A stretch of 64,000 nucleotides of DNA from Macrostomum lignano (Eukaryota). Shown in pieces: positions 1 to 60,173 of this stretch. Under the pieces are notes generated by a model. The model had not been told where the DNA came from and made no database searches. It saw nothing but the letters and a program-made list of their open reading frames with translations. Positions within the stretch are counted from its first letter, which is position 1. Every line of letters starts with the position of its first letter. The translations under genes were made by a program, and so were the position numbers. The DNA is taken from positions 62,001 through 126,000 of the forward strand of contig NIVC01000483.1 in the NCBI GenBank assembly GCA_002269645.1, given 5' to 3'.

Positions 1-172
1 CCAGACACGTTCTTAACCGAACTAGACACGATCTTAACCGAACTAGACACGATCTTAACTGATAGACACGTTCTTAACCGAACTAGACACGTTCTTAACC
101 GAACTAGACACGATCTTAACCGATAGACACGTTCTTAACCGAACTAGACACGTTCTTAACCGAACTAGACAC
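1..172. repeat. 21-bp minisatellite (ACTAGACACGTTCTTAACCGA) with 19-bp variants, truncated by the window edge
   Basis: About 8 directly visible tandem copies. Confidence 0.9.
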
Positions 173-244
173 CTTGATTCACAGAGTGAAAACACATTCT
201 AACAGAATCAGACCAGGGTAGAGCTGTTTAGAGCGCGCTCAAAC

Positions 245-3200
245 TCACTCAGTTTTGCTGCCTTCAGCTCCCTGACCATCTGCCGTGGTGGCAGCGGCAG
301 CGGCTGCGGCGGCAGCGACCTGCCTCACCAGTTCCTTCCTGTCGTCGCCCCAGGCCCGGAATCGCCGAAAGAACTCTTTGTCGGGTCGATCGTGCAAAGC
401 GGCCCAATCCAGGCCCTGAGCAGACCGCGACATCGGATGCCTGCTCAGCCAATCTTGCCGTTTAGCCATCATCTCATCGCTTGTCGTCGTTGCAGCAGCA
501 GCTTCAGCCAAGTCTTTGGACTCGCTTAGCAACTCAATAGCGAGAATGTAGGCCTGGTCTAGCCATCGAATATAAGAGCCGTAGCATTCAGTCTGTTCGA
601 TGACGTCATTGGCCAGGGCAAGGGCTCGTTTGGGATTGCCGGCGGCTCGGTGCAGCCTTTAGAGATGAAAAAAGTATTTAAATTATTGAATCTCAATTAG
701 ATGACCCAAGTTTACCAAATGTTGATCTAATAGCCGAGTTAAACAATTAAAATTGACAGACTCATGCAGTGACTAGCAGACTCAAAATATCAGACTCAAA
801 ATATCATAGATTCGAAATCAACCAGACTCAGAATCTCACAGACTTAAAATCCCAGACTCAGAATTTGACAGACTCAAAATCTCATACTCAAAATCCCAGA
901 CTCAAACTCTCCCAGATTCAAAATCTCCCAGATTCAAAATCTCAAAGGCTCAAATCTCAGAGACTAAAAATCACCCAGACTCAAAATCTCACAGACTCAA
1001 AATCCCAGACTCAAACTCTCCCAGATTCAAAATCTCATAGATTCAAAATCTCTCAGATTCAAAATCTCAAAGGCTCAAATCTCAGAGACTAAAAATCACC
1101 CAGATTCAAAATCTCAAACTCAGAATTTGACAGACTCAAAATCTCACAGACTCAAAATTTCACACTCAAAATCTCACAGACTCAAAATCTCATACTCAAA
1201 ATCCCAGACTCAAACTCTCCCAGATTCAAAATCTCCCAGATTCAAAATCTCCCAGATTCAAAATCTCACAGACTCAAAATCTCAGTATCCAAATCCCAGA
1301 CTTAACATCTCAGACTCAAAATCACCCAGACTCAAAATCTCACAGACTCAAAATCTCACAGACTCAAAACCTCAGACTCAAAAATTTCAGACTCAAAATC
1401 TCAGAATAAAAAATCTGACAGACTAAAAAATGGCCTACTTAGCCAACTGGAGTTTAGCTCTGAGCAGCAGGTGCCCTTGAGCTGGTTGGCTGTCAATCAG
1501 CGCTTCTAGAGCTTCATCAGCCAGCCGCTCAGCCTCCGGACGGTACTCCCCCGAAGGCACATCGGCCAGAAGTCTGCCCAGACAGATTCTGGCTTGCACA
1601 GCTGCCGGACTGTGCCGACCGATGGTATTCGAGAGAATTTCAACAGATTTTCTACCGAATTCGATGGCGACTTGAAGCAGTTCAACTGGCAGGATGGCGG
1701 GGTTCGCTAGGCGAGCAGCTTGGGCTAGATTAGTCATCAAGGAGGCAGCGTTGGGATGCTGAGATGCCGACTCGCCAGAGCTCATTCTGACTGCGGCTAG
1801 AGAAGCTTCCACGTGAGCGACAACTTCTTGGGGCTCCGCAGTTGCACCCTGACCGCGGCGGCTGCGATGACGGAGCCGTAGAAGCTGCGCCAACGACAGG
1901 TGCGACTGGACTTCGGCTAGTAGCGGGTGCTGGTAGCCCAGGATGAGCTGAGCGAATAAAGATGCGTTCTGGAATTTGATGGATAGGAAATTTATTAAAT
2001 TTTATAAGAATGAGGTGAGAATTAGCCTTAGAAACGGAATTGATTTTTCCTAGAAAGAGAGAATAAGTTTCCTATAGAATGAGATCCAATTTTTACGAAA
2101 AGAACGAAGTTTTTTAGCTGATGCGATATTTTCTAAGAATTAGGTGTAATCTAAAAATTATATTTTGTTAGAACAGAACGACATTGGCGGAATTAGTTGG
2201 ATTGATGTTAGCATTCGTCAGCAAATGAAATCAGTGGTTCCTTTGTTTATTGGTGTATTAGGAACGAATAAAGAAAATGGGGAAGATAAAGATATGACGA
2301 TGCGCCTGCCGTATATTTATAGATATGACTTGGTTTTCGAGAAAGTTCTAAAAATATTTTCTACAGTATAACAAATTTAACGTGCTGATTAATTTACAGA
2401 TAATTACACAGATATTTACTATGCTATATCCAGGACGTTTACTATACTATTTACTATAGTACATAATTTAGTATTCATTAATAAATGCTTGAAACTAGCT
2501 CGTAGAATATTTTAGGTGAAGATAAACTTCTGCAAAGATCGCGACATTTGGATTTGTGCATGGTTTCTAGAATGTTAGATTAATACGGTTAATGAAAGTT
2601 TCTCGAACGAAGGGCGGTACAATGTCAAATCGATTCTTATTTAAAATTTACATCGGACTATCTTAAGATACTGACATGGTTTTTAAACCATGAGATACTT
2701 AAGATTGCACCGAATTACTTACTTAAAAGCTAAAAAAATTACACTAAAATAACTATTACTTAAAAAAACTAAATTTTCTGACTTTGGTTTGTTTCCTTCT
2801 TAGAATGACATCGTATAAATTTCGATACAGTAAAAATAAAATTCGTTTTTCATACATATGAGACCAAATAGTTTTCTAGGGATGTTAGAGAAATATTTCC
2901 AAACACTAGAAAATAAAACTTTGCACACCCGTGACCAAACTTACCACAGCAACTTCGACTCCAAAATCATCTTGACAGAAAGCGTTTGAAAATTTGACAA
3001 AGTTTAACAACGACTTGATGTATTCCGGCGATTCTGTTTTGTAAAATTTGCTGAAATAATAATAAATTAAAATTTATGTTAATATTAAGTCAAGCGGGTA
3101 TGGAAATTACAAAAAAGTACTTACTAAGCATGCTGTACGCAAGCAACAGCTAATTTTTCCGCTTTTCCTTCATCGGAATTTGTTAGGTAAAGTTGCAAAG

Positions 3201-5903
3201 CGTGGTAGAGAATTTTGAAGACGGCCTCTGTATCATTAAGATCCACAGTCTAAAATTGATATTTTATTAAATTTTTCAAGTATAAAAGAAATCTTTTCTA
3301 TATTTACTCAAGAGACGACTCAATTTATGTATAATTAACAATTTTAATTCAATAAAAAGTCATTTTGATTTAAATTTTTACTTACTATTTTTCGTTTAAT
3401 TATTTTTTTAATATTAATAAAACGTAATAAAAAATTATCTATACCTAAATATTTAATAGAGTTATTGATCATTTATTTTATCATTTAAAACTATAAGTAA
3501 AACAAATAATAATGAATCCTGTTTAATAAAAGAAAACTCTGCAGGCCCGCACTGGCAAATAATTAATCAATTAATATTCTTATGCTTGCATATTCTAAAA
3601 AATCTAAAAACAAATTAGCATGCACTCACCGAGATGGCGCTACCAAAAGCACCCAACGCGGACGCCAGGCTACCCTGGTCCAGCAGCATCCGACCAATCT
3701 GTGCCTGCAGCAGGGCCTGGTTGTCCATCACTTTTTGGCCAAACGACAAGCGGTTGATTCTGGCCGCCGTGGCCTGTGCCGCCTGACTGGCAGCGTCGGC
3801 CAGCTGGTAGTCGGCGTTGTTGAGCCGGGCTTCCATCAGCCTGACGCTGGCGCGGTAGGTTGGCAGCAGGGCTTCCACGCAGTCGCCGCCGAACCTTTTC
3901 AAGGAGATTAGTGAGAGTTATATACAGTCGCTTGTGTCACAGAGACTATGGTGGCTTTGTGTGTCACATGGATGTAATAAAATGGCAACATGGCCATACA
4001 TGTGCAACACCCTGGCGAGGGGCTTAGCCAAGGTAAGTCACAAAAATGCCAACCCAAAAATAGACATAGCACTAATTAGGTACTGAGACATTTAGCCTTA
4101 AAAATCAAGTCATAGTTACTCCTGCCGTTTACCCAAAATTTTGTTAATTTTAGCACAAAAGCCCCAAATGAATGTCACCGTCGGTCATAGTCATCGGATG
4201 TTGTGATGGAATTATTTTATCACTAGATCGCCGAGCGTTACACTAACAACGTGTGAAACAAGTTTTACTTCAGACAGCTCAGATACTTAAGCAGCCTCAC
4301 CTATTCAGATAGTCGCACAAAGACCCGGCAACTGTCTCGCACTCTCTAAACAGATTGACTCCGGCCAGAAAGTCGAACAGTCGGCCGGCCAAATTTGCCA
4401 GCTTAGTAGCCGCGTACCGCGACCATCGACCGTCGGTGAAAAGTCGTCGACCGTCCGGCCCGGTAGATAAGTTAGCAAACGCGGTTGCTATGGCGTTGCC
4501 AAGGCTAGGCGCATCGGCTAGTAAGTATTTATAAGCCAGATGACGCTTGCGAATGTCGCACAGCAGACGGTGCAGCGGCGAAATGAAGCAGACCAGCATG
4601 AGTCGTTCGGGATTGGCCGAACCGGCGGCTTGCAAGGCGAACTCGTCGGCGGTTCGCAGTCGCGACAGGCATCGACGCTCGTGCTTGGCCGCGGAGCGAC
4701 CGCTGCCGCCGTTAGCTGTCCAGGCTTCGTAAGTTCGAGCCAGGTGCTCGGGCAAGTCCTCCGGTAGGCGACTCAATCGAATAGACGGATTGGCTTCGAG
4801 CTGACTCAGTCTGGACTTGGCCGCCGAGCGTAGCGCCTTCCAACGCTGACGATGCTCTGCAGACGTCGGATCGTCTTCTTGAGGTTGAATCGGCGGCAGC
4901 GGCGGCTGCTGCTGCTGCTGCTCAGAGTGTTGCATTGAGTCTGTGGAACTCGATTTCAGATTGGCTAGATTTGTGCTGTCTAGAAAGTCAACCAGGATTT
5001 GATGATTCCGAGCGGTGGTGGCGTCGACGGTGGATGTTGCCGATAGAGACGTCCTGGGTAGGTGACGGGACTTTGCTTCTAGATCGCTTGCTCTAGAGGT
5101 TCCTCTGGTGTGGATTAGATCTAGAGGGCGATTCTCTGGTGCAGATTAGATCTAGAGGGCGATTCTCTGGTGCAGATTAGATCTAGAGGGCGATTCTCTG
5201 GTGCAGATTAAATGTAGAGGGCGATTCTCTGGTGCAGATTAAATGTAGAGGGCCATTCTCTGGTGTAGATTAGATCTAGAGGGCCATTCTCTGGTGTAGA
5301 TTAGATCTAGAGGGCCATTCTCTGGTCCAGATTAGATCTAGGGGGCTGGTTTTCAGAATAGAGATTCGAGGGCGATTCTCAGAACAGAGATTTGAGGGCG
5401 ATTCTCAGAACAGAGATTTGAGGGCGATTCTCAGAATAGAGATTCGAGGGCGATTCTCAGAATAGAGATTCGAGGGCGATTCTCAGAATAGAGATTTGAG
5501 GGCGATTCTCAGAATAGAGATTTGAGGGCGATTCTCAGAATAGAGATTTGAGGGCGATTCTCAGAATAGAGATTCGAAGAACAGAAGGGCGTTCATTCGG
5601 CAATACTTGCAGCTCACATTCCCACCTGAACTTGTTGTACCACTGGGTGCTGGGATCCTTGCTGGGCAGCATGTCAAGCAGCATTCGCGTCTTCTCAGAC
5701 CTGTTGGCACCGCGGGACACGAAGCGAACATCGGTGTCGCTGAGAATACCTTCACGTCTCAGGTAATCAACCACGGGATCTACATTGAGCTGCTGTACAA
5801 GGCAGACTCGATTGACGCGAAGTCGAAGAACATTTTGGGCCTCTCGTTGGCTCACTGAGCTGACGCGGTCTTGCACAGATCTTGATTTGGGTTTTGAATG
5901 CAA
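245..5903 (-). CDS. CARD-containing APPBP2-like TPR protein (multi-exon; start codon not located)
   Basis: Phase-compatible GT-AG exons on the minus strand: about 5870-5626 (CARD, LRVNRVCLVQQLNVDPVVDYLRREGILSD...EKTRMLLDML), 5053-4301, 3894-3630, 3249-3125, 3050-2945, 1968-1439 and 656-245 (TGA at 247-245, or GTGAGT donor after 249). The translation tracks remembered APPBP2 blocks: LPEDL~LPENI, KRHL, RLMEARLNNADYQLA~RLLHVRNGNCKYHLG, KAEKL~KAEQL, LGYQHP. Confidence 0.8.
769..1425. repeat. Degenerate 16-bp minisatellite (GACTCAAAATCTCACA), intronic
   Basis: Tandem copies visible; the + strand ORFs cycle with a 16-aa period, as expected for a 16-bp unit. Confidence 0.9.
5095..5345. repeat. 31-bp minisatellite (GAGGGCGATTCTCTGGTGCAGATTAGATCTA), intronic
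   Basis: About 8 tandem copies, period 31 (5121 to 5152). Confidence 0.9.
5350..5578. repeat. 26-bp minisatellite (GAGGGCGATTCTCAGAATAGAGATTY), intronic
   Basis: About 8 tandem copies directly adjacent to the 31-bp array. Confidence 0.9.
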
Positions 5904-6983
5904 AAAAGCTTTTTTTCAAAGACTTCTTTCATTTTAATTTTGATAGCCATGCAAAGCAAAATGTCTAACTTTTAATTTAGTTTCTATGCTAAATCATAAT
6001 TAGAAAATTAGCTTTAAGTGCATAATTTAAGAGGAAAAGTTAGAATTGATTTTCAGTAATTTTTATTCCTAAGAAGGTATGGCAGTTATTGATAAATAGC
6101 ATAACAACCTAAAGCAAAGATATTAAACAAAATGCTATAAAAGCATTATTGCAATTATTAAAGCTATTACTGATAAAATAAAAAATCGATATATATATAT
6201 TACCTAGTGACAACTAATATACAATTGTATTTTAAACCAGTTGACCAAAAGTAATATTAATAAGGTTTTTTGTTTAGCACATGCCATATGAATTCTGATG
6301 TTCTGCACTTAATGACTAGACAATGTTAGTAATGTAAATTCTTCTTAAATGATGTACGAGCCTTTTAAAAGCAACAGTCGACAAATAAACAAAACATATG
6401 TCTAAAAATTGGATGTTTAGTAGAGAGGTAAAATTGATCGCATACCTAGATAGATACCTACCGACAAACCATTTTTATTATATGGAGTACACGAATATCT
6501 TAAAATGAAAAACATTGAAGATTAGATTACCTCGAAGAAGCGTTACCAACTTTCTCTTGCAAAGTTGGAAAATTTCTGCTCATTTCCTCTTAAAAAGTAT
6601 CTAGTAGTCTTATTTTTAAACACACGCAAAGTATCCAAAATTGCTAGACTACCTTACAGTCCGTGAGCTATAGATCATTCTTGGGTCTTATTAAACTTGA
6701 AATCGTTCCCCCAAACAAAAAAATACTTACATAAATTTGTTCTTTTTTCAATCTGTTATATCAAAAAACTTTTTATTTATTTGATACTTGCGCTATTACT
6801 ATAGAATTAAGGGCAAAGTAATTTTGTTCAGAAGATTTTGTTTTACTTGTTGTAGCTAATAGTGTCGCTCCTATTCAGTTTAAAATTTGAATATGTTTTC
6901 GGCTATATACAAAATCAAATCATCGGTTTGATCTATACCAGCGTCTTTGTATTTTCCTACTGACAAGAGAAGCAAAGCTCCTA

Positions 6984-8095
6984 ATGGAAGAAGAGCAAAG
7001 CGATTTTGTTATTCCCGTAAAGACGGATACTGACGAATTCGTCTTGCGAGGTCGCCCTTGCGAGCTTTCCTCATTTTCTTTTGTCCCTCCAGAGCGCCAT
7101 GCACCGAGGGAACGTACATATTTCAACGTAGATAAAAATGTAAGATTTTGCCACCAGGGGCGTAGCCAGGAATTTCCTACGGGGGGATACACCAAGGTGA
7201 ATTTTCTACGGGGGGATACACCAAGGTAAAAGTGCTATGACAGAGTCACATGGTATCATGTATAGCAACAAAGGGCAACAAAAAAGTTTTGGTCAGGCTC
7301 TTCGGGGGGGGGATACATCCCCCCTTATCCCCCCCCCTCCCTACGCCCCTGTTTGCCACTAGTATGAAAGTAGCTTCCAGACCATATATAAGCATTTTAT
7401 ATGCCCAGCTGTCCTAAAGTAATACTGGCTTAAACCCTCTAAAGTTAGAACAGACGAAATAATATAGAGTTGGTAAATTTTTTGTCAGTTTTAAGTGATT
7501 TACTTTTATTTTAAAACCCACGAGACTTTGAAAATAGATGATATATAAATAAAGGAAAGGCGAAATTGAAGACTACAACTACCTTAGATGCAGCGCAGTA
7601 TACAGTAAAAATAGATTAAAATTTCAATACATTTCCTCTCTCACCCTAGCTATTGCCTTTACCGCCCATCCCACAGGAACGCTACTCGGCCTATGGCTAC
7701 GATAGGATTTTTCACCAGGAGCGCGATTTCAATGCCAAGCTGCACAGAGACGACAGGGAGCATGCAAAGTCTCAAGGCCTCCAAGTGCATCAGGAGGTAA
7801 TTTAAATGTTTTGTAACGGCTAGTAGTGAACTTTATAAGTTCAAAACATTTACACTGCAAATAATTACATTTTAACGGCTTGGTACGTTGATGATCCGTT
7901 TTAACACGGTTCCTGGATATAACGATATTTCCAGGAAATTTCAAAGCCGGTACCGACTCTCTACTCGTCTGTGTACGGCAAGCGGCTATCGAATCAGCTG
8001 GACCCCCGGATCGGGCGCATTGCCGCGTCGGCATCGTTCAGTCCGAGTTCTACAGGCGAAACGGCACAGAGATCAATGGGCAAGGCGTAGATTAA
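6984..8095 (+). CDS. CFAP90: Cilia- and flagella-associated protein 90 (C5orf49) orthologue, 3 exons
   Basis: Exons 6984-7139 (LSSFSFVPPERHAPRERTYF), 7677-7796 (FNAKLHRDDREHAKSQGLQVHQE) and 7935-8095 (PVPTLYSSVYGKR...DRAHCRVGIVQSEFYRRNG), all with phase-0 GT-AG junctions. The HRDDREHAK and SSVYGKR motifs are those of C5orf49. Exon 3 needs one extra C in the C5 run at 8003-8007. Confidence 0.85.
7155..7351. mobile_element. hAT-type (Tip100-like) MITE in CFAP90 intron 1
   Basis: Perfect 11-bp TIR CAGGGGCGTAG/CTACGCCCCTG; exact 8-bp TSD TTTGCCAC at 7147-7154 and 7352-7359. Confidence 0.9.
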
Positions 8096-10234: not shown

Positions 10235-10735
10235 TCAACGGAAGATCCTCATGCTGGCCGCCAGGCTGCTGAACTCCTCAAAGCTGATCTGACCGTCTCC
10301 GTCGGTGTCAGCGGCCGCCATCATCTGGTCGAGGTCGTGCTCGCTCAGGCCCTCCTCTAACAGGTCGTTCATCACGTGAGCCAGCTCAGCCCTGGAGATG
10401 AAGCCGTCCTTGTTTCTGTCCAGCAGCTCAAAAATTCGCTTCCTCTCGTCGACATCTTCATCTGTCGATGCCGATGTCGACTTGCCGTTGGCTTTCTCGG
10501 CGAAGGCGTCCATCATGGCTACGAACTCGGAGAATTCCAACCGGCCGTTGGAGTTCTTGTCGAACTCGCGGATTAGCGAGTCGGCCTCAGCTCGGGTCAG
10601 GGCCTGCCCGGCAGACCGCATCAGCCTGACGAGTTCGCGAGCCTCAATCGCTCCGCTGCCATCGACATCGAATTTGTCGAACACTTCGCGTAGAATCTCC
10701 TGACTGACGGCCCCAGTGCCGCTCTGGTTGGACAT
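10235..10735 (-). CDS. Calmodulin-like protein, four EF-hands, intronless CDS (166 aa)
   Basis: Loops DVDGSGAIEARE, DKNSNGRLEFSE, DRNKDGFISRAE and DTDGDGQISFEE; ATG and stop present. Confidence 0.92.
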   Translation of the reverse strand: MSNQSGTGAVSQEILREVFDKFDVDGSGAIEARELVRLMRSAGQALTRAEADSLIREFDKNSNGRLEFSEFVAMMDAFAEKANGKSTSASTDEDVDERKRIFELLDRNKDGFISRAELAHVMNDLLEEGLSEHDLDQMMAAADTDGDGQISFEEFSSLAASMRIFR

Positions 10736-14935: not shown

Positions 14936-17149
14936 GATGTTCAATTGAAAAGATATTTTTGGTGTAAAGTCTACTCAGATGTTATATTGCAAAATGCTTT
15001 TAGTTTAATTTTAAAAAGATTTTCCTCGCTGTAGTATGCATTTGATTTTTTGTTTATTTATTTTCGTGGAACTGAACGTGGAACTGAAAATCCGGTCATA
15101 TACACGTAGCACATGTAAAATTATTACTGAACGTAATTTTTTAAATCATCAACTGCAAGACTGAATGGGTCGAAAAACGACAATCGTTATTTACCAGAAA
15201 GTGTAAATGAATCCATGGTTCTATCTGCTATTTCCGTTTCAAATTGTATGTAAAATATAACTTAAGTTGTACCTGAAACTCAACGCATATCTTTCGCATT
15301 GTGGATTTTGCATAAGGAGTAAAAAGTGCTTGAAAATACTCTTGAGAATGATAATTGTTCAAAACCCCGAAAACCCGGTGGCCAAACCCGACCCGAACCG
15401 CGAACCCGGTACCCCTAACCCGAAACCCGAACCCGGTACCAAAACCCGACCCGAAACCCGACCCGACCCCGAACCCCGAACACCCCTATTCTTGGAGTAA
15501 GATTTGCTAATCCTGTTTCTAGTTTCTATAGGATCCCCTTGGCCAGCCCTCGAGCGGACCCATAGCTTTACTAGCCACATTGAGAATCGATATAAGGGAG
15601 AGAACTGTGAGAGGCACAGCTCAATGGGCTTATGCTTCCCGGCTCTAACCCTGTGAATTGCAGACAGGAAACTGCAACAAGGAGAGGCGGTTACTGCAGC
15701 ACAGGCAGGAGTGGCGGCAGGTGTGGCGGCTCTGTAAAATGCTTGAACAGCTAGCGAATTCCTATAACTATAAATGGGAGAAAGGAAAAATTATAGAAAT
15801 TCCTAAGCGAGAAAAAAATTAAAAACTGCTGACGCCGAATGAGCTGTGGAGCTGTGAGCGAGACAGTGACAGACTGAGCTGCCAAGTTGGAAACCCAATC
15901 CATTGTAAAAGCAGATTTTCTCTGTTGAGGGAAAAATGCAAAAAAAGGTTGTATCCAAAGTTTCATTTTGCACTTGGCGCTGTCCACTTTTCGCGTCTCA
16001 GTCGACAGCAGACACTTCAGAGTAACTAACGGAATTTTACATACACTTTAATACACAGCGACTTGTCAAAAACACAAGACAAGAGGAAGTATATTTTCAC
16101 ACAGAAGCATCCAACTTAGTGCATGTCTATGGACGAAACCCCCGAAGAAGCGTTTATAATTTGTCAAATTTTGCTTGTCACTTTTGTCACTTGTCGATTT
16201 GTCAAGTTGGAAATTTTGTCCGACATATGCTTTATGAAATAGGCCCCAGGCATGTACACTCTGTGCCTTGGCAGGTTGGCCCCTCATGGAGTCTAATTAA
16301 TGTACATAAAACATCTATAGAATTACACCGTAGATCACAAGGTCAGTCATCATGTAAATTCCAATTTAATAATAAGATTAATTATAGTTCAGGCCCGGGG
16401 TTCTGATAATTGGATACTAAAAAATTATTTATGAGCCTACACAAATCGATAGGTAATTGATCATGCTGGCATGACTATCTATGGATAGGGTAAGGTAGTC
16501 AATAAAAAGCTTGCTAATTGAATTTGGGCTCTACCCCTATCCCCAATATGATATTTCAGTATCATCACCTCTCTTAGAGAGAATTTCAGAATATCGTCAT
16601 TAATTGCAGTTCCACACACACAGGAAACCCAGAAATTTAATGCTGCATCCCACAGTCTGGGACTCAGCCCACACACTCTCTGGATTTTGAGCACTTTTTA
16701 TACGAGTTCGAATACGCTTGGGAAAAATTTCCTCCTCAATTTTTTTTAAGTAAAAAACTTTCTGCTATTAAACTTTTTGCTGGGCTATTGCGCACGCGAA
16801 TCGAGGGTACAGGGAGTGAGCTAGCGATTTAAAATCCGGGGTCGCTGCACACCCTGTATAAGTAAACTGCTTCGAAAGAGAAATTCACATGTAGCCAGTA
16901 TAAAGTTTTGTACAGACAATGAGTCGTATTTAAAAAGTTTTTAAAGATTAAAATGCTTCAGTCTTTCAGAAGAAAGGCATTTTTCAAGTCGGCTCTTTAA
17001 TCCCTTAAAGTCTGTTTTCTAGCCTAAGATCCCAGTATCAGCATCCCCTTTAAGCCTTGGCATTGCAGGATTTCACATTGATTGATGGCACCTTAGCAAC
17101 TCCCCTTTAGTCATGACCGAAGCCTAACTCTCTCTCTCTCTCTGATGCT

Positions 17150-21927: not shown

Positions 21928-22389
21928 TCAGGCATGGAAGATCTTCATCTTGGCAGCCATGTTGTTGAACTCGTCGAAGCTGATGGCGCCGTCTTTGTCG
22001 GTGTCAGCCTCGTTCAGCATCTGCTGCAGCTGCTCGTCGGAGAGGCCCTCCTTCAGGATGTCGTTCATGACAGCCCGGAGCTCCTGCAGGGAGATCACGC
22101 CGTCCTTGTTCTGGTCCAGCAGCTGGAAGATCTTCTCCTTCTCGGACTGGGGCCGGTGCCCGCCCTTGGACAGGAAGCTGTTCATCATGTTGACGAACTC
22201 GCCGAATTCCAGGGTGCCGTTCTCGTTCTTGTCGAACTCTTTGATGAGAGCTTCGGCCTCAACTCGGGTGATGGTGTGTCCGGCGGCGCGGATCAGGTTC
22301 ACCAGCTCCTTGGCCTCGATGGTGCCATTGCCATTAGCATCGGCGCTGTCGAACACCTTCTTCAGAACTTGTTCGCTCTCGCTGGCCAT
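21928..22389 (-). CDS. Calmodulin-like protein, four EF-hands, intronless CDS (153 aa); paralogue of 10235-10735
   Basis: Loops DANGNGTIEAKE, DKNENGTLEFGE, DQNKDGVISLQE and DTDKDGAISFDE; a TTGCAG acceptor lies just upstream of the ATG. Confidence 0.93.
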   Translation of the reverse strand: MASESEQVLKKVFDSADANGNGTIEAKELVNLIRAAGHTITRVEAEALIKEFDKNENGTLEFGEFVNMMNSFLSKGGHRPQSEKEKIFQLLDQNKDGVISLQELRAVMNDILKEGLSDEQLQQMLNEADTDKDGAISFDEFNNMAAKMKIFHA

Positions 22390-56691: not shown

Positions 56692-57564
56692 GTATCAAGT
56701 CAACTTGGCTTAGCAAAGAAGTAAAAACTGATCTGTCGGGTCGGACAAACTTTCGCACCATAATAAATAGCCAGTGTCTCTGCTTTATAGCCATAGACAA
56801 CTCGGGACTCCGTATGTTAAGGCGGATACAATTCACTCTTGCTGAGTCCAATAGGAATGAGCCATGTGTGCATGGTACCAAGAATTTCGACCATAGACAT
56901 GTGTGGCTTGTAGCAAAAGCCTCACCTCCTTGGTGCAGATTGGCGCATAAAACTATAATACAAGTAATACAAAACTTTGCAAAGCTGCTGTACTTTTTGA
57001 CTTTATAGAACTGTTCTACTCGTAGAATGCATACAAAGCTTTATATATTATGCTTAATAAGACTGGTATTGCGAAGCTTTTTTGCTGAAGAAACCACGCA
57101 ACAGTATTCCTTCTGCTTCCCTGCCTTATTAAGGAACCAATTCCAGTAAAACAAAAGGCCCTCCGCCATCGCTTCTCTGAAATATTCACCCAATTAAAGA
57201 GAAAATGCATCACTTCTGCTTGTTTAAAGAGCTGTTTTTTCAGAAAATTGGCTCCACATTTTGCAGAATAGATTATTAGGAGTAGAATTGGTGTCTGTAC
57301 AGCACTGGCGCGCTTGCATGTGCTCAAGATGTAGAGTGTTCTACCTCCCGTAAAAAGTAAAGTGTTAATCATAGAATGCTATAAGTAAGTCAGCCAAAAG
57401 TTTCCGGAATTTTTTAGAATCGAACTTTTAGTTAATTTTTGTCTATGGAAAAGCTTAAAAGCAGCAACCATCTACTATGCTGTTGGCCAGCCTTATCATC
57501 ACTCTTTAGCTTAACATTGCTCAGTTTCCCAGACCCTGCCTACTTAAGCCAGCAAGTGCATCCA

Positions 57565-57945
57565 ATGGAACTGCCAAGAACTGAATGGCGAGCAATTCTG
57601 CTCAACCACTTTCATGCGGGACGCAACGCAGCAGAGGCACATCGCGAGTTGTTGCAGCTGATGGGCCCACATGCACCCTCCAAGTCGTCGGTGTACGACT
57701 GGTTCTCTTGCTTTGCTGAGGAGAACTATGAGCTGAAGGACAAGCCGAGGTCAGGCCGACCCCCTGCTGCTGATGGCGATGCCGTTCTCCAAGCCCTTGA
57801 GGACAATCCGGACTACAGCGTGCGCAAGCTGTCAGCCGCTACTGGGGTGTCCTATGGCACGGTCCGGCGGAGCCTGCATGCTGCAGACAAGGTGCCGAAG
57901 AAGCCAACTCTGGTGCCCCATGAGCTGACACCTCAGCAGCTGAGA
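57565..57945 (+). CDS. Mariner transposase, N-terminal HTH part (codons 1-127)
   Basis: MELPRTEWRAILL...WF..F...D.PRSGRP...LVPHEL. Confidence 0.9.
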
Positions 57946-59520
57946 CAACAACAACAACAACAGAGTACGCTGCCAGTTCACAAAAGCAGCGTCAGATGGC
58001 GCGCTTCAAAGCTTGGGCGCGAACAAAAGCCGCACCGCCGGCAGAGTCCGGGGCGCCGGCGTCAGCCAGCAGACAGTCGACGTAGCGCCGAGTCTTCGCC
58101 TGTCCCCGCCGGTAGGGTGCCTGCAACGTAAGTAGCAGCACCTCCTGCACCGGCTCCGGACAGTAGGCCTCGGCGCGGATGACGTGGCCTGCCAGCTGGA
58201 GTCGCCGACGGCGCAGCAGATCGCTAGGACGGTCCAGGCCGGCGCGATGATAGAGCGCCGTGTTGGTGACTCGCTCGTTGCCGATCTTGAAGGCGGCGCG
58301 CAGCAGGCCAGCGTGCGCCGCGTCGACTTGAGCCTCGAGCGAGTCTGTCAGAGTCCAGGTCTCGGCGTTGTATAACAGGACGGTCTCGATCACCGCCTGG
58401 AACAGCGCCGCCCTCTGGCGGTCCGGTAGGGCCTCGGACTGCAGGACTGACCTTATAGAACGAAAGGCAGCCCAAGCAAGTCCTCGGCGACGCCGCAGAT
58501 CCTCGCGGACGTCGGGAACCAGACCGCCGAGGTAGACGAACTGCTGACATCTTGGAAGCTCACTCGCCTGTCCGTCAGCGCCTCGGCAGAAGATTGCAGC
58601 CTCGGTGTCGTCCGGCACGCATAGCACGACGGTCTTCTGCGTGTTGACCACCAGGCCGACGCTCGCAGCAAAGGCAACCAGCCTATCCAGCTGTCGTTGG
58701 GCGCCCTCGACGGTCGAGGACAGCAGGGCGAGGTCATCGGCGTAGCCAAGCACGCTGAGCCGTCTCTCCGGTTGGCGTCGACCCACGCGTCGCCGCAGCA
58801 GGAAGCCGTCGTCGTTGGAAGGCAGAGCAGTCCATAGCACCCAGTCAAGCACCAGAATAAATAGGAACGGCGCTAGCGTATCTCCCTGGAGCACCCCGGA
58901 GGATGTCTCGAAGAAATCCGATAGGCCGTCCGGTGTTGAGACAGCAGCCGTCGTGCCGTGGTACAGCGCCATGACAGCAGAAATCAGCAGCTCTGGCACG
59001 TTGTACGCACGGAGCACCTCTGGGAGCGCGTCCCTCACGACCGAGTCGAAAGCCTTCCTGAAATCGACGAAGATCAGGATCAGGGTCAACTGGCGGATGC
59101 GCGCCTCCTCGATGACTCATCGAAGAGCCAGGATCTGCGTCACTGTGCCGCGATGGGGCCGGAATCCGTTCTGCTCAGGTCGCAGGTACGGGTCCAGCAC
59201 AGGCTGTAACCGCGATAGCAGCATGCGGTTGAACAGCTTCGCGGCGCAGGACTGTAGGCAGATGCCTCGATGCTCCTCGAGCTTGGTGGTGCCCGGCTTC
59301 TTTGGAATGGCGACGATGTGCGCCGTGGTCCATTCGTTTGGCGCCACCTCACCGAAAAGCACGCGGTTCATCACTCTGGCGACCTCAGTGGCCACGCAGT
59401 GGATCCGCAGCGCCTCGGTGGGCACCTCGTCCGGACCAAGCGCTTTGCCGCCCGGCGACTGCCGAGCGAACTTCACAACGTCGGCTGTGCTGACTGGGGC
59501 AACATTGAAGCAGCTTGCGA
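57946..59520 (-). mobile_element. 5'-truncated RTE-clade non-LTR retrotransposon (RT domain, one in-frame TGA)
   Basis: RT motifs PKKPG, RGICL, EQNGFRPHRG, FVDFRKAFDSV, GVLQGDTLAPFLF, YADD, YLG; (TTG)n tail; 11-bp TSD AGCAGCTGAGA at 57935-57945 and 59521-59531. Confidence 0.95.
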
Positions 59521-59531
59521 AGCAGCTGAGA

Positions 59532-60173
59532 GCCAGGGTGAATGTGGCAACTTCGAATCTTCGCCAGGCCGGTTCTCCAAACTTTCTCAAGTCGATAATC
59601 GCTCAAGACGAGCAGTGGGTCTGCTATGAGAACCCAAGCACATCAGCCGTCTGGGTCGATGCTTCTGAAGAACCACCCAGCTGCCCAATGCGGAACCCCC
59701 ACTGCGGCAAGGAGCTGCTCTTTTTCTGGTTCTGCTCGTCTGGCCCTGTTTTCTGGGAGGTCATCCCGCATGGCATGGCTGTGAACGCGGAGGTGATCTG
59801 CAGCGAACTGGAGCAGGTCGCCCGTTTGCTGCGATCCGTGTGCCCGGGACACCGCGACAAGGTGCTCCTCTTCGACAATGCGTGGCCTCACAAAGCAAGA
59901 CTCACCCAGGCCAAGCTGGCAAGCCTGGGCTTCAGTGTTTTGCCCCACCCACCATACTCGCCAGACCTCTCGCCATGCGACTACCATGTGTTCAGGTCTC
60001 TCCAGAGCTTTTGTGATGGACAGCGGTTCGCCAACAAGCAACATGTGGAGCAGGCAGTGCAGAAATGGATTGATTCAAAGCCTGCGAGCTTCTGGAGGGA
60101 GGGGATTGAGGCATTGCCAGCAAGATGGGAGAGGGTCAAGGCCTTGAATGGCAACTACATCACATCGCTGTAA
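59532..60173 (+). CDS. Mariner transposase, C-terminal catalytic part (213 aa)
   Basis: QDEQW, FDNAWPH and HPPYSPDLSPCDYHVF; in frame with the N-terminal part once the LINE and one TSD are removed (340 aa total). Confidence 0.92.
   Translation, partial: ARVNVATSNLRQAGSPNFLKSIIAQDEQWVCYENPSTSAVWVDASEEPPSCPMRNPHCGKELLFFWFCSSGPVFWEVIPHGMAVNAEVICSELEQVARLLRSVCPGHRDKVLLFDNAWPHKARLTQAKLASLGFSVLPHPPYSPDLSPCDYHVFRSLQSFCDGQRFANKQHVEQAVQKWIDSKPASFWREGIEALPARWERVKALNGNYITSL

What the first reader, a model, noticed from the sequence alone, without database searches (positions are those of the whole stretch)
245..5903. CARD fused to an APPBP2-like TPR protein: candidate death-fold-targeted ubiquitin-ligase adaptor
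Seen: seven phase-compatible exons give a CARD (split by intron 5625-5054, reading WYNKFR|TSL...NHQILVDFLDS) followed by a helical-repeat protein. Two exons (3249-3125 and 3050-2945) are absent from the ORF track. Known: APPBP2 is a TPR substrate receptor of CRL2 (Elongin BC-Cul2) ligases that binds C-terminal degrons and, as I recall it, has no CARD. Block-by-block resemblance to APPBP2 runs across all exons (from memory). Inference: a CARD-bearing APPBP2 paralogue could link CARD proteins (caspases, Apaf-1, immune adaptors) to cullin-mediated degradation. I know of no characterised protein with this architecture.
Basis: partly seen in the sequence, partly recalled or inferred. Interest (0 to 1): 0.85.

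Follow-up and report, generated by a model that had tools for sequence, protein, structure and literature searches.

The report
Flatworm CARD-fused APPBP2-like TPR gene
This stretch of the flatworm Macrostomum lignano genome holds a real gene joining a CARD (a cell-death/immunity docking domain) to a diverged copy of the ubiquitin-ligase receptor APPBP2; the same unstudied fusion occurs in annelids, brachiopods, molluscs and nemerteans, but it has lost the APPBP2 motifs expected of a cullin adaptor.

Summary
That ORF is 100% identical to an annotated Macrostomum lignano protein. Pfam finds a CARD above its threshold.

The APPBP2 resemblance is real homology:
- A family profile hits human APPBP2 (8JAL) at E 4e-45 over residues 41-574.
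- hhalign gives probability 99.9%.
- Foldseek ranks APPBP2 first.

CARD plus APPBP2-like proteins of 790-860 aa exist in Owenia, Lingula, Lottia, Babylonia, Physella and Tubulanus. Lingula, Lottia and Tubulanus also carry a canonical 577-584-aa APPBP2. The CARD form is therefore an old, fast-evolving paralogue.

The ubiquitin-adaptor inference is not supported. The BC-box and Cul2-box motifs, the zinc-dimer residues, and 16-18 of the 18 R-x-x-G pocket residues are not conserved.

New finding: the annotated M. lignano products splice across the stop codon (donor at 249|248) into a Rab1-like GTPase encoded beyond the window edge.

I found no paper on this family. It is a new variant of a known kind. 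Its most likely role is a CARD-docked TPR scaffold whose ligand is unknown.

The parts
6531..6583 (-). Exon 1 (not in the finding). ATG at 6583-6581, encodes MSRNFPTLQEKVGNASS + 2 nt. Donor GAG|gtaatc.
   Evidence: Identical to the N-terminus of annotated P0001. DNA is 100% identical in the second locus L002.
5626..5880 (-). Exon 2, encoding aa 18-102. CARD helices 1-5 are coded from about 5849. Acceptor ag at 5882-5881, donor CAG|gtggga.
   Evidence: Pfam CARD E 3.5e-9, residues 38-106. RAIDD CARD is the best PDB sequence match. AF2 model pLDDT 87-96 over residues 31-110.
4301..5053 (-). Exon 3, encoding aa 103-353. Contains CARD helix 6 (about 5053-4975, ...NHQILVDFLDS), a low-complexity linker with the conserved PLPxI motif (aa 153-158), and the start of the APPBP2-homologous region (from about aa 205, nt about 4749).
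   Evidence: L155, P156 and I158 are invariant in A1; the motif is present in all 8 full-length members. hhalign start point.
3630..3894 (-). Exon 4, encoding aa 354-442. TPR helices including the conserved SFGQ block.
3125..3249 (-). Exon 5, encoding aa 443-483. AT-rich (41% GC). Holds the KAEKLAVACVQHA block.
   Evidence: Present in annotated P0001/P0002. Conserved with canonical APPBP2.
2945..3050 (-). Exon 6, encoding aa 484-519. AT-rich (36% GC). Holds the KFYKTESPEYIKSLLNFVKFSNAF block.
1439..1968 (-). Exon 7, encoding aa 520-695. C-terminal TPRs, equivalent to APPBP2 TPR6-10.
   Evidence: Weak Pfam TPR_12 hit at aa 664-716.
245..656 (-). Exon 8, encoding aa 696-832. Last TPRs and an Ala-rich tail. 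Stop TGA at 247-245, the point where orthologues from other phyla also end.
243..249 (-). Alternative donor GA|GTGAGT (exon ends at 249, intron starts at 248), overlapping the stop codon. The annotated products use it to join a Rab1-like GTPase whose exons lie beyond window position 1 (L001 16043-17151).
   Evidence: P0001/P0002 continue ...GSKTE-QN(E/K)... Exon mapping, sequence. Pfam Ras E 5.9e-48, Rab1A E 1e-46. No in-frame ATG in the first GTPase exon and no AATAAA/ATTAAA between the stop and the acceptor.

Best explanation
Window 245-6583 (minus strand) encodes the Macrostomum lignano member of an uncharacterised paralogue family of APPBP2 found across Spiralia.

Shown:
- An N-terminal six-helix CARD is joined by a poorly conserved linker, carrying an invariant PLPxI motif, to a complete APPBP2-type module of N-terminal helices plus about 11 TPRs.
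- The family forms its own clade beside canonical APPBP2, which is retained in the same species.

Inferred mechanism: the CARD is the best-conserved module. It most likely docks the protein by homotypic CARD-CARD contact onto a CARD partner. [quoted passage not shown] The TPR solenoid would bind a second, unknown ligand. The protein would then act as a death-fold scaffold.

It is not an R-x-x-G C-degron receptor like human APPBP2. Coupling to Elongin BC-Cul2 is unlikely on motif evidence but not excluded.

In M. lignano the annotated, RNA-seq-derived mRNA also splices across the ancestral stop codon and appends a Rab1/Rab35-like GTPase. Both an 832-aa form and a form of about 1,060 aa are therefore plausible.

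Confidence by part: about 0.9 for identity, architecture and paralogy; about 0.4 for the scaffold mechanism.
For: - Gene model: eight GT..AG exons, an 832-codon ORF, identical to GenBank models. Those models derive from RNA-seq assemblies (PMC5730564).
- CARD: Pfam above its cut-off. AF2 predicts a helix bundle with a broken helix 1, pLDDT about 90.
- APPBP2 homology: family profile against 8JAL E 4.3e-45 over chain residues 41-574, next hit kinesin light chain at 5e-7. hhalign probability 99.9%, E 3.7e-37, 560 columns. Foldseek 8JAL E 1.9e-13, TM 0.71, next hit 1.3e-5.
- Family: 21 representatives found. Nine of the ten scanned carry a Pfam CARD, and the full-length ones (790-860 aa) add TPR hits. 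Named species are Owenia, Lingula, Babylonia, Tubulanus, Physella, Lottia, Bulinus and Plakobranchus.
- Paralogy: canonical APPBP2 is present in Lingula, Lottia and Tubulanus. A neighbour-joining tree separates two clades: 63% mean identity within canonical, 33% within CARD-type, 19% between them.
- CARD is the most conserved region: 45% identity, against 23-37% elsewhere.
- Loss of APPBP2 functional residues.
- Both genomic copies keep an intact ORF; dN/dS is 0.33, from only 26 differences.
- M. lignano has a CARD caspase, and flatworms have APAF-1 (PMC11463336).
Against: - I examined no reads or protein data directly. Transcript support is indirect, through the annotation.
- CARD partners and the TPR ligand are pure inference.
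- The region homologous to the APPBP2 VHL box is still present, so non-canonical Elongin C binding cannot be excluded.
- Residue-level statements rest on alignments at 17-20% identity.
- Pocket-equivalent columns are no better conserved than background within the family (0.49 against 0.535). There is therefore no positive evidence for a conserved ligand pocket at that site.
- Canonical APPBP2 sequences were in the AF2 alignment, which could bias the model toward that fold.
- The M. lignano protein is the most divergent member (22% identity to the others). It lacks the conserved LVKGFxHxWxPxPEN segment.
Confidence: 0.6

Rival explanations
1. The protein is a CRL2 (Elongin BC-Cul2) substrate receptor. 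Its CARD brings CARD proteins such as caspases or APAF-1 to the ligase for ubiquitination, or regulates the ligase as the CARD of cIAP1 does.
For: - Homology to APPBP2 extends into the N-terminal VHL-box region: hhalign aligns CARD-type columns from 212 to canonical position 4, with a shared W-x-P motif.
- APPBP2 is an established CRL2 receptor (PMC10614623).
- A CARD inside an E3 ligase has a precedent in BIRC2/cIAP1, whose CARD is among the better PDB matches (E 1.9e-4).
Against: - The BC-box Leu aligns to Glu, Asn or Pro. No [STP]Lxxx[CSA]xxx[AILV] match is found at the homologous position in any of 8 members, against 11 of 12 canonical proteins.
- The Cul2-box Pro aligns to Lys or another non-Pro residue.
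- M. lignano lacks the segment altogether.
- Zinc-dimer Cys54 is lost in all 8 and His89 is kept in only one; only 0-2 of 18 degron-pocket residues are kept.
Confidence: 0.25
2. In M. lignano the functional product is the three-part protein CARD - APPBP2-like TPR - Rab1/35-like GTPase. This would be a GTP-switched scaffold, possibly associated with membranes, created by read-through splicing into the first gene of a downstream Rab array. This is compatible with the best explanation and adds to it.
For: - Both annotated loci give the fused ORF.
- A consensus donor GTGAGT overlaps the stop. The acceptor ttttcag lies at L001 16042.
- The first GTPase exon stays open in the fused frame in both loci. 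It has no in-frame ATG of its own: L002 has only an out-of-frame ATG that ends in TGA, and L001 has none.
- There is no AATAAA or ATTAAA between the stop and the acceptor.
- GTPase copy 2 has its own ATG exon.
- The gene models come from RNA-seq assemblies with boundaries set by experimental evidence.
Against: - Orthologues in five other phyla end where the TGA lies and have no GTPase.
- About 7% of M. lignano assembled transcripts are multi-gene precursors, so a chimeric assembly is possible.
- The copy in this window's contig has a 1-nt frameshift in the last GTPase exon.
- The C-terminus ...SQKCPPKK does not end in the paired cysteines (CC/CXC) typical of Rab prenylation sites (my reading of the sequence against textbook Rab features; not tested).
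- The exons lie outside the window.
Confidence: 0.45
3. Artefact. The CARD exon belongs to a different gene, or the helical part is a generic kinesin-light-chain-type TPR protein with no specific APPBP2 relationship.
For: - A single-sequence phmmer search against the PDB did not find APPBP2 at E <= 10.
- Pfam sees only a sub-threshold TPR_12 hit.
Against: - The same CARD-plus-TPR order, with conserved residues spanning the exon junction, is found in independently annotated genomes of five other phyla.
- Profile and structure searches single out APPBP2, by about 38 orders of magnitude in sequence E-value and 8 in Foldseek E-value over other TPR proteins.
Confidence: 0.03

Closest known systems
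Human APPBP2 (PAT1), the R-x-x-G C-degron receptor of CRL2 (PDB 8JAL and related entries; PMC10614623)
   Same: Homologous over nearly the whole protein (chain residues 41-574 by profile; positions 4-581 by hhalign). Same N-terminal helices plus an 11-TPR solenoid. Top Foldseek hit.
   Different: - Has an added N-terminal CARD and linker.
- Only 17-19% identical.
- BC-box and Cul2-box motifs are not conserved; zinc-dimer Cys54 is lost in all 8 members and His89 is kept in one.
- 16-18 of the 18 degron-pocket residues are replaced.
- It forms a separate clade, and canonical APPBP2 is retained in the same species.
CRADD/RAIDD (CARD + death domain adaptor of caspase-2)
   Same: The best PDB sequence match for the CARD (3crd: E 9e-4 with the single sequence, 6.8e-6 with the profile). 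Both have an N-terminal CARD followed by a second interaction module, which is adaptor logic.
   Different: The second module is an APPBP2-type TPR solenoid, not a death domain. The protein is about four times larger. CRADD is reported absent from flatworms (PMC11463336).
cIAP1/BIRC2 (an E3 ligase with an internal CARD)
   Same: Its CARD has detectable similarity (E 1.9e-4). It is a precedent for a CARD embedded in ubiquitin-ligase machinery.
   Different: There are no BIR or RING domains here. Any link to ubiquitination would have to run through a cullin, and the motifs for that are not conserved.
APAF-1 and NLR-type sensors (CARD + NOD + repeat domain)
   Same: An N-terminal CARD followed by a C-terminal repeat domain that could sense a ligand.
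   Different: There is no NB-ARC or NACHT oligomerisation module. The only P-loop is the Rab-like GTPase of the annotated fused isoform.
Kinesin light chain TPR domain
   Same: TPR_12-type repeats; the second-best family in sequence searches (E about 5e-7).
   Different: It covers only about 200-250 residues and scores far below APPBP2. It has no CARD.

Membership tests
CARD (death-fold superfamily, Pfam PF00619) | Significant match to the CARD profile above the curated threshold | tested here: met
   E 3.5e-9, 37 bits against 23.9. Nine of ten relatives scanned also match.
CARD (death-fold superfamily, Pfam PF00619) | Six-helix bundle with a kinked helix 1 | tested here: met
   AF2 model with MSA: helices 29-40/42-48, 51-60, 66-73, 78-91, 98-111 and 114-129; pLDDT 87-96 over residues 31-110. 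This is a prediction only.
CARD (death-fold superfamily, Pfam PF00619) | Homotypic binding to another CARD | not testable with these tools
   Needs a binding assay.
APPBP2 family | Full-length homology to the APPBP2 N-terminal helices plus 11-TPR solenoid | tested here: met
   Profile against 8JAL E 4.3e-45. hhalign 99.9%, 560 columns. Foldseek rank 1, TM 0.71.
APPBP2 family | Orthology to canonical APPBP2 (same clade) | tested here: not met
   It forms a separate clade. A canonical copy is present in the same species: Lingula P0125, Lottia P0136, Tubulanus P0137.
APPBP2 as CRL2 substrate receptor | VHL box: BC-box [STP]Lxxx[CSA]xxx[AILV] and Cul2-box PhiPxxPhixxxPhi in the N-terminal helices | tested here: not met
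   The BC-box pattern matches in 11 of 12 canonical proteins and the Cul2-box pattern at its normal position in 10 of 12. Neither matches at the homologous position in any of 8 CARD-type proteins. This is motif evidence only.
APPBP2 as CRL2 substrate receptor | R-x-x-G C-degron pocket residues (Y338, Y341, V342, Y345, R380, L384, E387, E388, N434, R437, S441, Y468, E469, L472, H476, S479, Y483, Y515) | tested here: not met
   0-2 of 18 are identical in each CARD-type protein; M. lignano keeps 1 of 18. In the spiralian canonical APPBP2s the pocket-containing motifs (ALILEEIAID, HYGNLGRLYQSM, SxGHLASLYNYD, LEYDYRGL) read essentially unchanged.
APPBP2 as CRL2 substrate receptor | Zinc-mediated dimer through Cys54 and His89 | tested here: not met
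   Position 54 is Pro in all 8. His89 is kept only in Lingula.
APPBP2 as CRL2 substrate receptor | Physical binding to EloB/EloC/Cul2 | not testable with these tools
   Needs co-IP or AP-MS, or a complex prediction.
Rab small GTPase (annotated fused isoform only; exons outside the window) | Ras/Rab G domain | tested here: met
   Pfam Ras E 5.9e-48 on P0001 residues 864-1025. Rab1A E 1e-46.
Rab small GTPase (annotated fused isoform only; exons outside the window) | Being part of the same polypeptide as the CARD-TPR module | tested here: inconclusive
   For: the donor over the stop codon, no ATG of its own, no poly(A) signal. Against: orthologues lack it, and this contig's copy carries a frameshift.
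NLR / STAND sensors | Central NACHT or NB-ARC NTPase | tested here: not met
   No such Pfam hit in the 832-aa product or in relatives.

The most novel reading that the evidence does not exclude
CARD-APPBP2-like proteins are a spiralian regulator of the CARD initiator caspase. They might be a platform without a NOD domain that took over when APAF-1 was lost in molluscs, annelids and brachiopods. Alternatively they might be a diverged cullin-type receptor aimed at death-fold proteins. In Macrostomum, a fused Rab GTPase would turn the protein into a GTP-switched CARD scaffold.
Probability: 0.18. Interest if true: 0.85.

Novelty: new variant of a known kind. Interest (0 to 1): 0.6.

Why it matters
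APPBP2 has been studied as a single-copy, highly conserved CRL2 receptor for R-x-x-G C-degrons. A second, ancient paralogue that carries a CARD and has rebuilt both the ligase-docking motifs and the degron pocket shows that the fold was redeployed.

A recent inventory of lophotrochozoan apoptosis components does not mention APPBP2 or TPR proteins (term search of PMC11463336). [quoted passage not shown] How CARD caspases are controlled in these animals is open. This family is a conserved, unexamined CARD protein present in all those lineages.

M. lignano has transgenesis and RNAi, so the question is directly testable. The splice across the stop codon into a Rab gene would also be a clear example of domain accretion by read-through.

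Tried and rejected
- Single-sequence phmmer of the 832-aa product against the PDB found the RAIDD CARD but not APPBP2. The M. lignano sequence alone is too divergent, and a family profile was needed.
- Single-sequence AlphaFold2 of P0001 gave pLDDT 45 and was unusable.
- The search for homologous proteins with alignment A2 was swamped by bacterial TPR/kinase proteins and did not even return the alignment's own members. Probably the Ala-rich M. lignano words dominated the candidate list. That search was wasted.
The annotated P0001 was used instead.
- I tested whether pocket-equivalent columns are unusually conserved within the CARD family. They are not: 0.49 against a background of 0.535, and 81% of random column sets reach that value. 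I therefore dropped the idea of a 'remodelled but constrained pocket'.
- I tested whether the C-terminal TPR half evolves faster across the family. It does so only in M. lignano.
- Literature searches for APPBP2 with CARD, and for CARD-TPR architectures, found nothing relevant.

Full report
**Source and gene model.** Reading window 1-6600 on the minus strand and splicing by script gives eight exons. They are 6583-6531, 5880-5626, 5053-4301, 3894-3630, 3249-3125, 3050-2945, 1968-1439 and 656-245. All are flanked by AG acceptors and GT donors, and they form a continuous 832-codon ORF.

The first was missed: it carries the ATG, preceded three codons upstream by an in-frame TAA.

A protein search returned two Macrostomum lignano GenBank proteins. 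P0002 is 100% identical and P0001 is 98% identical. P0001 begins with exactly the peptide of the new first exon. Window 1-7000 is 100% identical to contig NIVC01000483.1 of assembly GCA_002269645.1.

The Mlig_3_7 annotation was built from RNA-seq assemblies, with gene boundaries set by trans-splicing and poly(A) evidence (PMC5730564). The exon joins therefore have indirect transcript support. I did not see reads.

**The CARD.** Pfam CARD matches residues 38-106 at E 3.5e-9 (37 bits, cut-off 23.9). The best PDB sequence match is the RAIDD CARD. In an 11-sequence family alignment, W98, Y99, F102 and L106 before the intron and L123, F126, L127 and T130 after it are invariant. The junction WYNKFR|TSL...LVDFLDS is thus validated by comparison across phyla. 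An AlphaFold2 model built with an alignment shows the helix bundle at pLDDT about 90.

**The APPBP2 claim.** The M. lignano sequence alone does not reach APPBP2 in the PDB. An exhaustive HMMER search with the helical part found 21 relatives. Nine of the ten scanned carry a Pfam CARD. The full-length ones (790-860 aa) add TPR_12-type hits and have no GTPase.

Named members come from these species:
- Owenia (annelid)
- Lingula (brachiopod), already auto-named 'amyloid protein-binding protein 2 isoform X1'
- Babylonia, Physella, Lottia, Bulinus and Plakobranchus (molluscs)
- Tubulanus (nemertean)

Three independent comparisons single out APPBP2:
- A profile of the family hits human APPBP2 (8JAL) at E 4.3e-45 over chain residues 41-574 of 585. 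The next family, kinesin light chain, scores 5e-7.
- Profile-profile comparison with 12 canonical APPBP2s gives probability 99.9%, E 3.7e-37, over 560 columns.
- Foldseek of the model ranks 8JAL first (E 1.9e-13, TM 0.71); the next hit scores 1.3e-5.

**Paralogue or orthologue.** A search with human APPBP2, whose sequence I verified against 8JAL, found canonical proteins of 577-584 aa at 63-66% identity in Lingula, Lottia and Tubulanus. These are the same species that hold CARD forms. A neighbour-joining tree separates a tight canonical clade (63% mean identity) from a loose CARD clade (33%; M. lignano 22% to the rest). Identity between the clades is 19%. The CARD form is an old, fast-evolving paralogue.

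**Does it work like APPBP2?** The structural paper (PMC10614623) defines three features: an N-terminal VHL box that binds Cul2-EloBC, a zinc dimer through Cys54 and His89, and an R-x-x-G pocket of 18 named residues in TPR6-11.
- Pocket: CARD-type proteins keep 0-2 of the 18 residues, and M. lignano keeps 1. In the spiralian canonical proteins the pocket-containing motifs read essentially unchanged.
- Zinc dimer: position 54 is Pro in all eight, and His89 survives in only one.
- VHL box: the BC-box [ST]LYNTAISAV matches the motif pattern in 11 of 12 canonical proteins and the Cul2-box LPENxQFDV in 10 of 12. Neither has a match at the homologous position in any of 8 CARD-type proteins. M. lignano lacks that segment entirely.

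The homologous helices are still there, so binding is not excluded. The inference 'therefore a cullin adaptor' nevertheless loses its basis.

Pocket-equivalent columns are no better conserved than background within the family. The CARD is the best-conserved module, at 45% identity. An invariant PLPxI motif sits in the otherwise variable linker.

**Most likely mechanism.** I favour a CARD-docked TPR scaffold. The CARD would engage a CARD partner and the solenoid another ligand. M. lignano has a CARD caspase, flatworms have APAF-1, and the other phyla have CRADD (PMC11463336). This is inference. The CRL2 model remains a rival at about 0.25.

**An unexpected extension.** Both annotated proteins run past my stop codon into a Rab-like GTPase (Pfam Ras E 5.9e-48; Rab1A E 1e-46).
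- The stop TGA (247-245) is overlapped by a consensus donor GTGAGT (248-243).
- The acceptor and GTPase exons lie beyond window position 1, at L001 16043-17151.
- They head what looks like a tandem array of four Rab-like units.
- The first GTPase exon has no in-frame ATG in either locus.
- No poly(A) signal separates it from the stop.
- Copy 2 has its own ATG exon.

Against a real fusion: orthologues in other phyla end at the position of the TGA. About 7% of M. lignano assembled transcripts are multi-gene precursors. This contig's copy has a frameshift in the last GTPase exon. I rate the fusion about even.

**Other checks.** The two genomic copies differ at 26 of 2,496 coding sites, with dN/dS 0.33, and both ORFs are intact. 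No paper linking APPBP2 to a CARD was found.

**Verdict.** CARD plus APPBP2-like paralogue is supported. The ubiquitin-adaptor function is not supported by the defining motifs. The architecture is not unique to this genome but is uncharacterised. It is a new variant of a known kind, of moderate to high interest.

Noticed in passing
L001 16043-22923 (beyond window position 1, same strand as the gene): What looks like a tandem array of four Rab1/35-like GTPase units lies directly downstream. Copy 1 lacks its own start codon and is spliced to the CARD gene in the annotation. Copy 2 has its own ATG exon. Copy 3 shows a frame break inside its first G-domain exon. Copy 4 is more divergent.
   Followed up: partly
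L001 about 17065-17075 compared with L002 (outside the window): The GTPase fused to this window's gene has a 1-nt deletion in a G run (CTGGGGGTCAGC against CTGGGGCGTCAGC in copy 2). It shifts the frame after ...ELCWG, so P0002 ends in nonsense residues while P0001 is intact. This may be an assembly error or an early step of decay.
   Followed up: partly
window 3125-3249 and 2945-3050: The two small exons are 41% and 36% GC, while the other coding exons after the short 5' exon are 54-65% GC. Yet they encode the block best conserved with APPBP2. The GC-rich exons are also where the M. lignano protein has diverged most, toward Ala/Arg/Gly-rich sequence. This is unexplained.
   Followed up: no
window 3-172, 777-1429, 5103-5346, 5353-5574: Minisatellites fill the introns and the 3' flank: 21 nt x 8, 16/30 nt x 41, 31 nt x 8 and 26 nt x 8.5. 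Similar arrays occur in the GTPase introns.
   Followed up: no
aa 153-158 of the product (window about 4905-4888) and all relatives: An invariant short motif [Y/F]-x-x-L-P-x-I (PLPPI in M. lignano) sits in the otherwise unconserved linker between the CARD and the APPBP2-like module. It is a candidate docking motif with no known partner.
   Followed up: partly
window 10235-10735 (-) and 21928-22389 (-): Two EF-hand (calmodulin-like) genes, each a single uninterrupted ORF of 166 and 153 aa with four EF hands (Pfam E about 1e-33). They appear to be paralogues.
   Followed up: partly
window about 6903-8090 (+): The neighbouring gene on the opposite strand is annotated with a CFAP90 domain. A beta-TrCP-like F-box/WD40 gene lies about 11 kb beyond window position 1 (L001 26555-27296).
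   Followed up: no
window 57439-60173: Mos1/mariner-type transposase pieces lie on the + strand (an HTH_48 ORF at 57439-58131 and a DDE ORF at 58815-60173). A reverse-transcriptase ORF lies on the opposite strand (57992-59089) and overlaps both, suggesting nested transposon insertions.
   Followed up: partly
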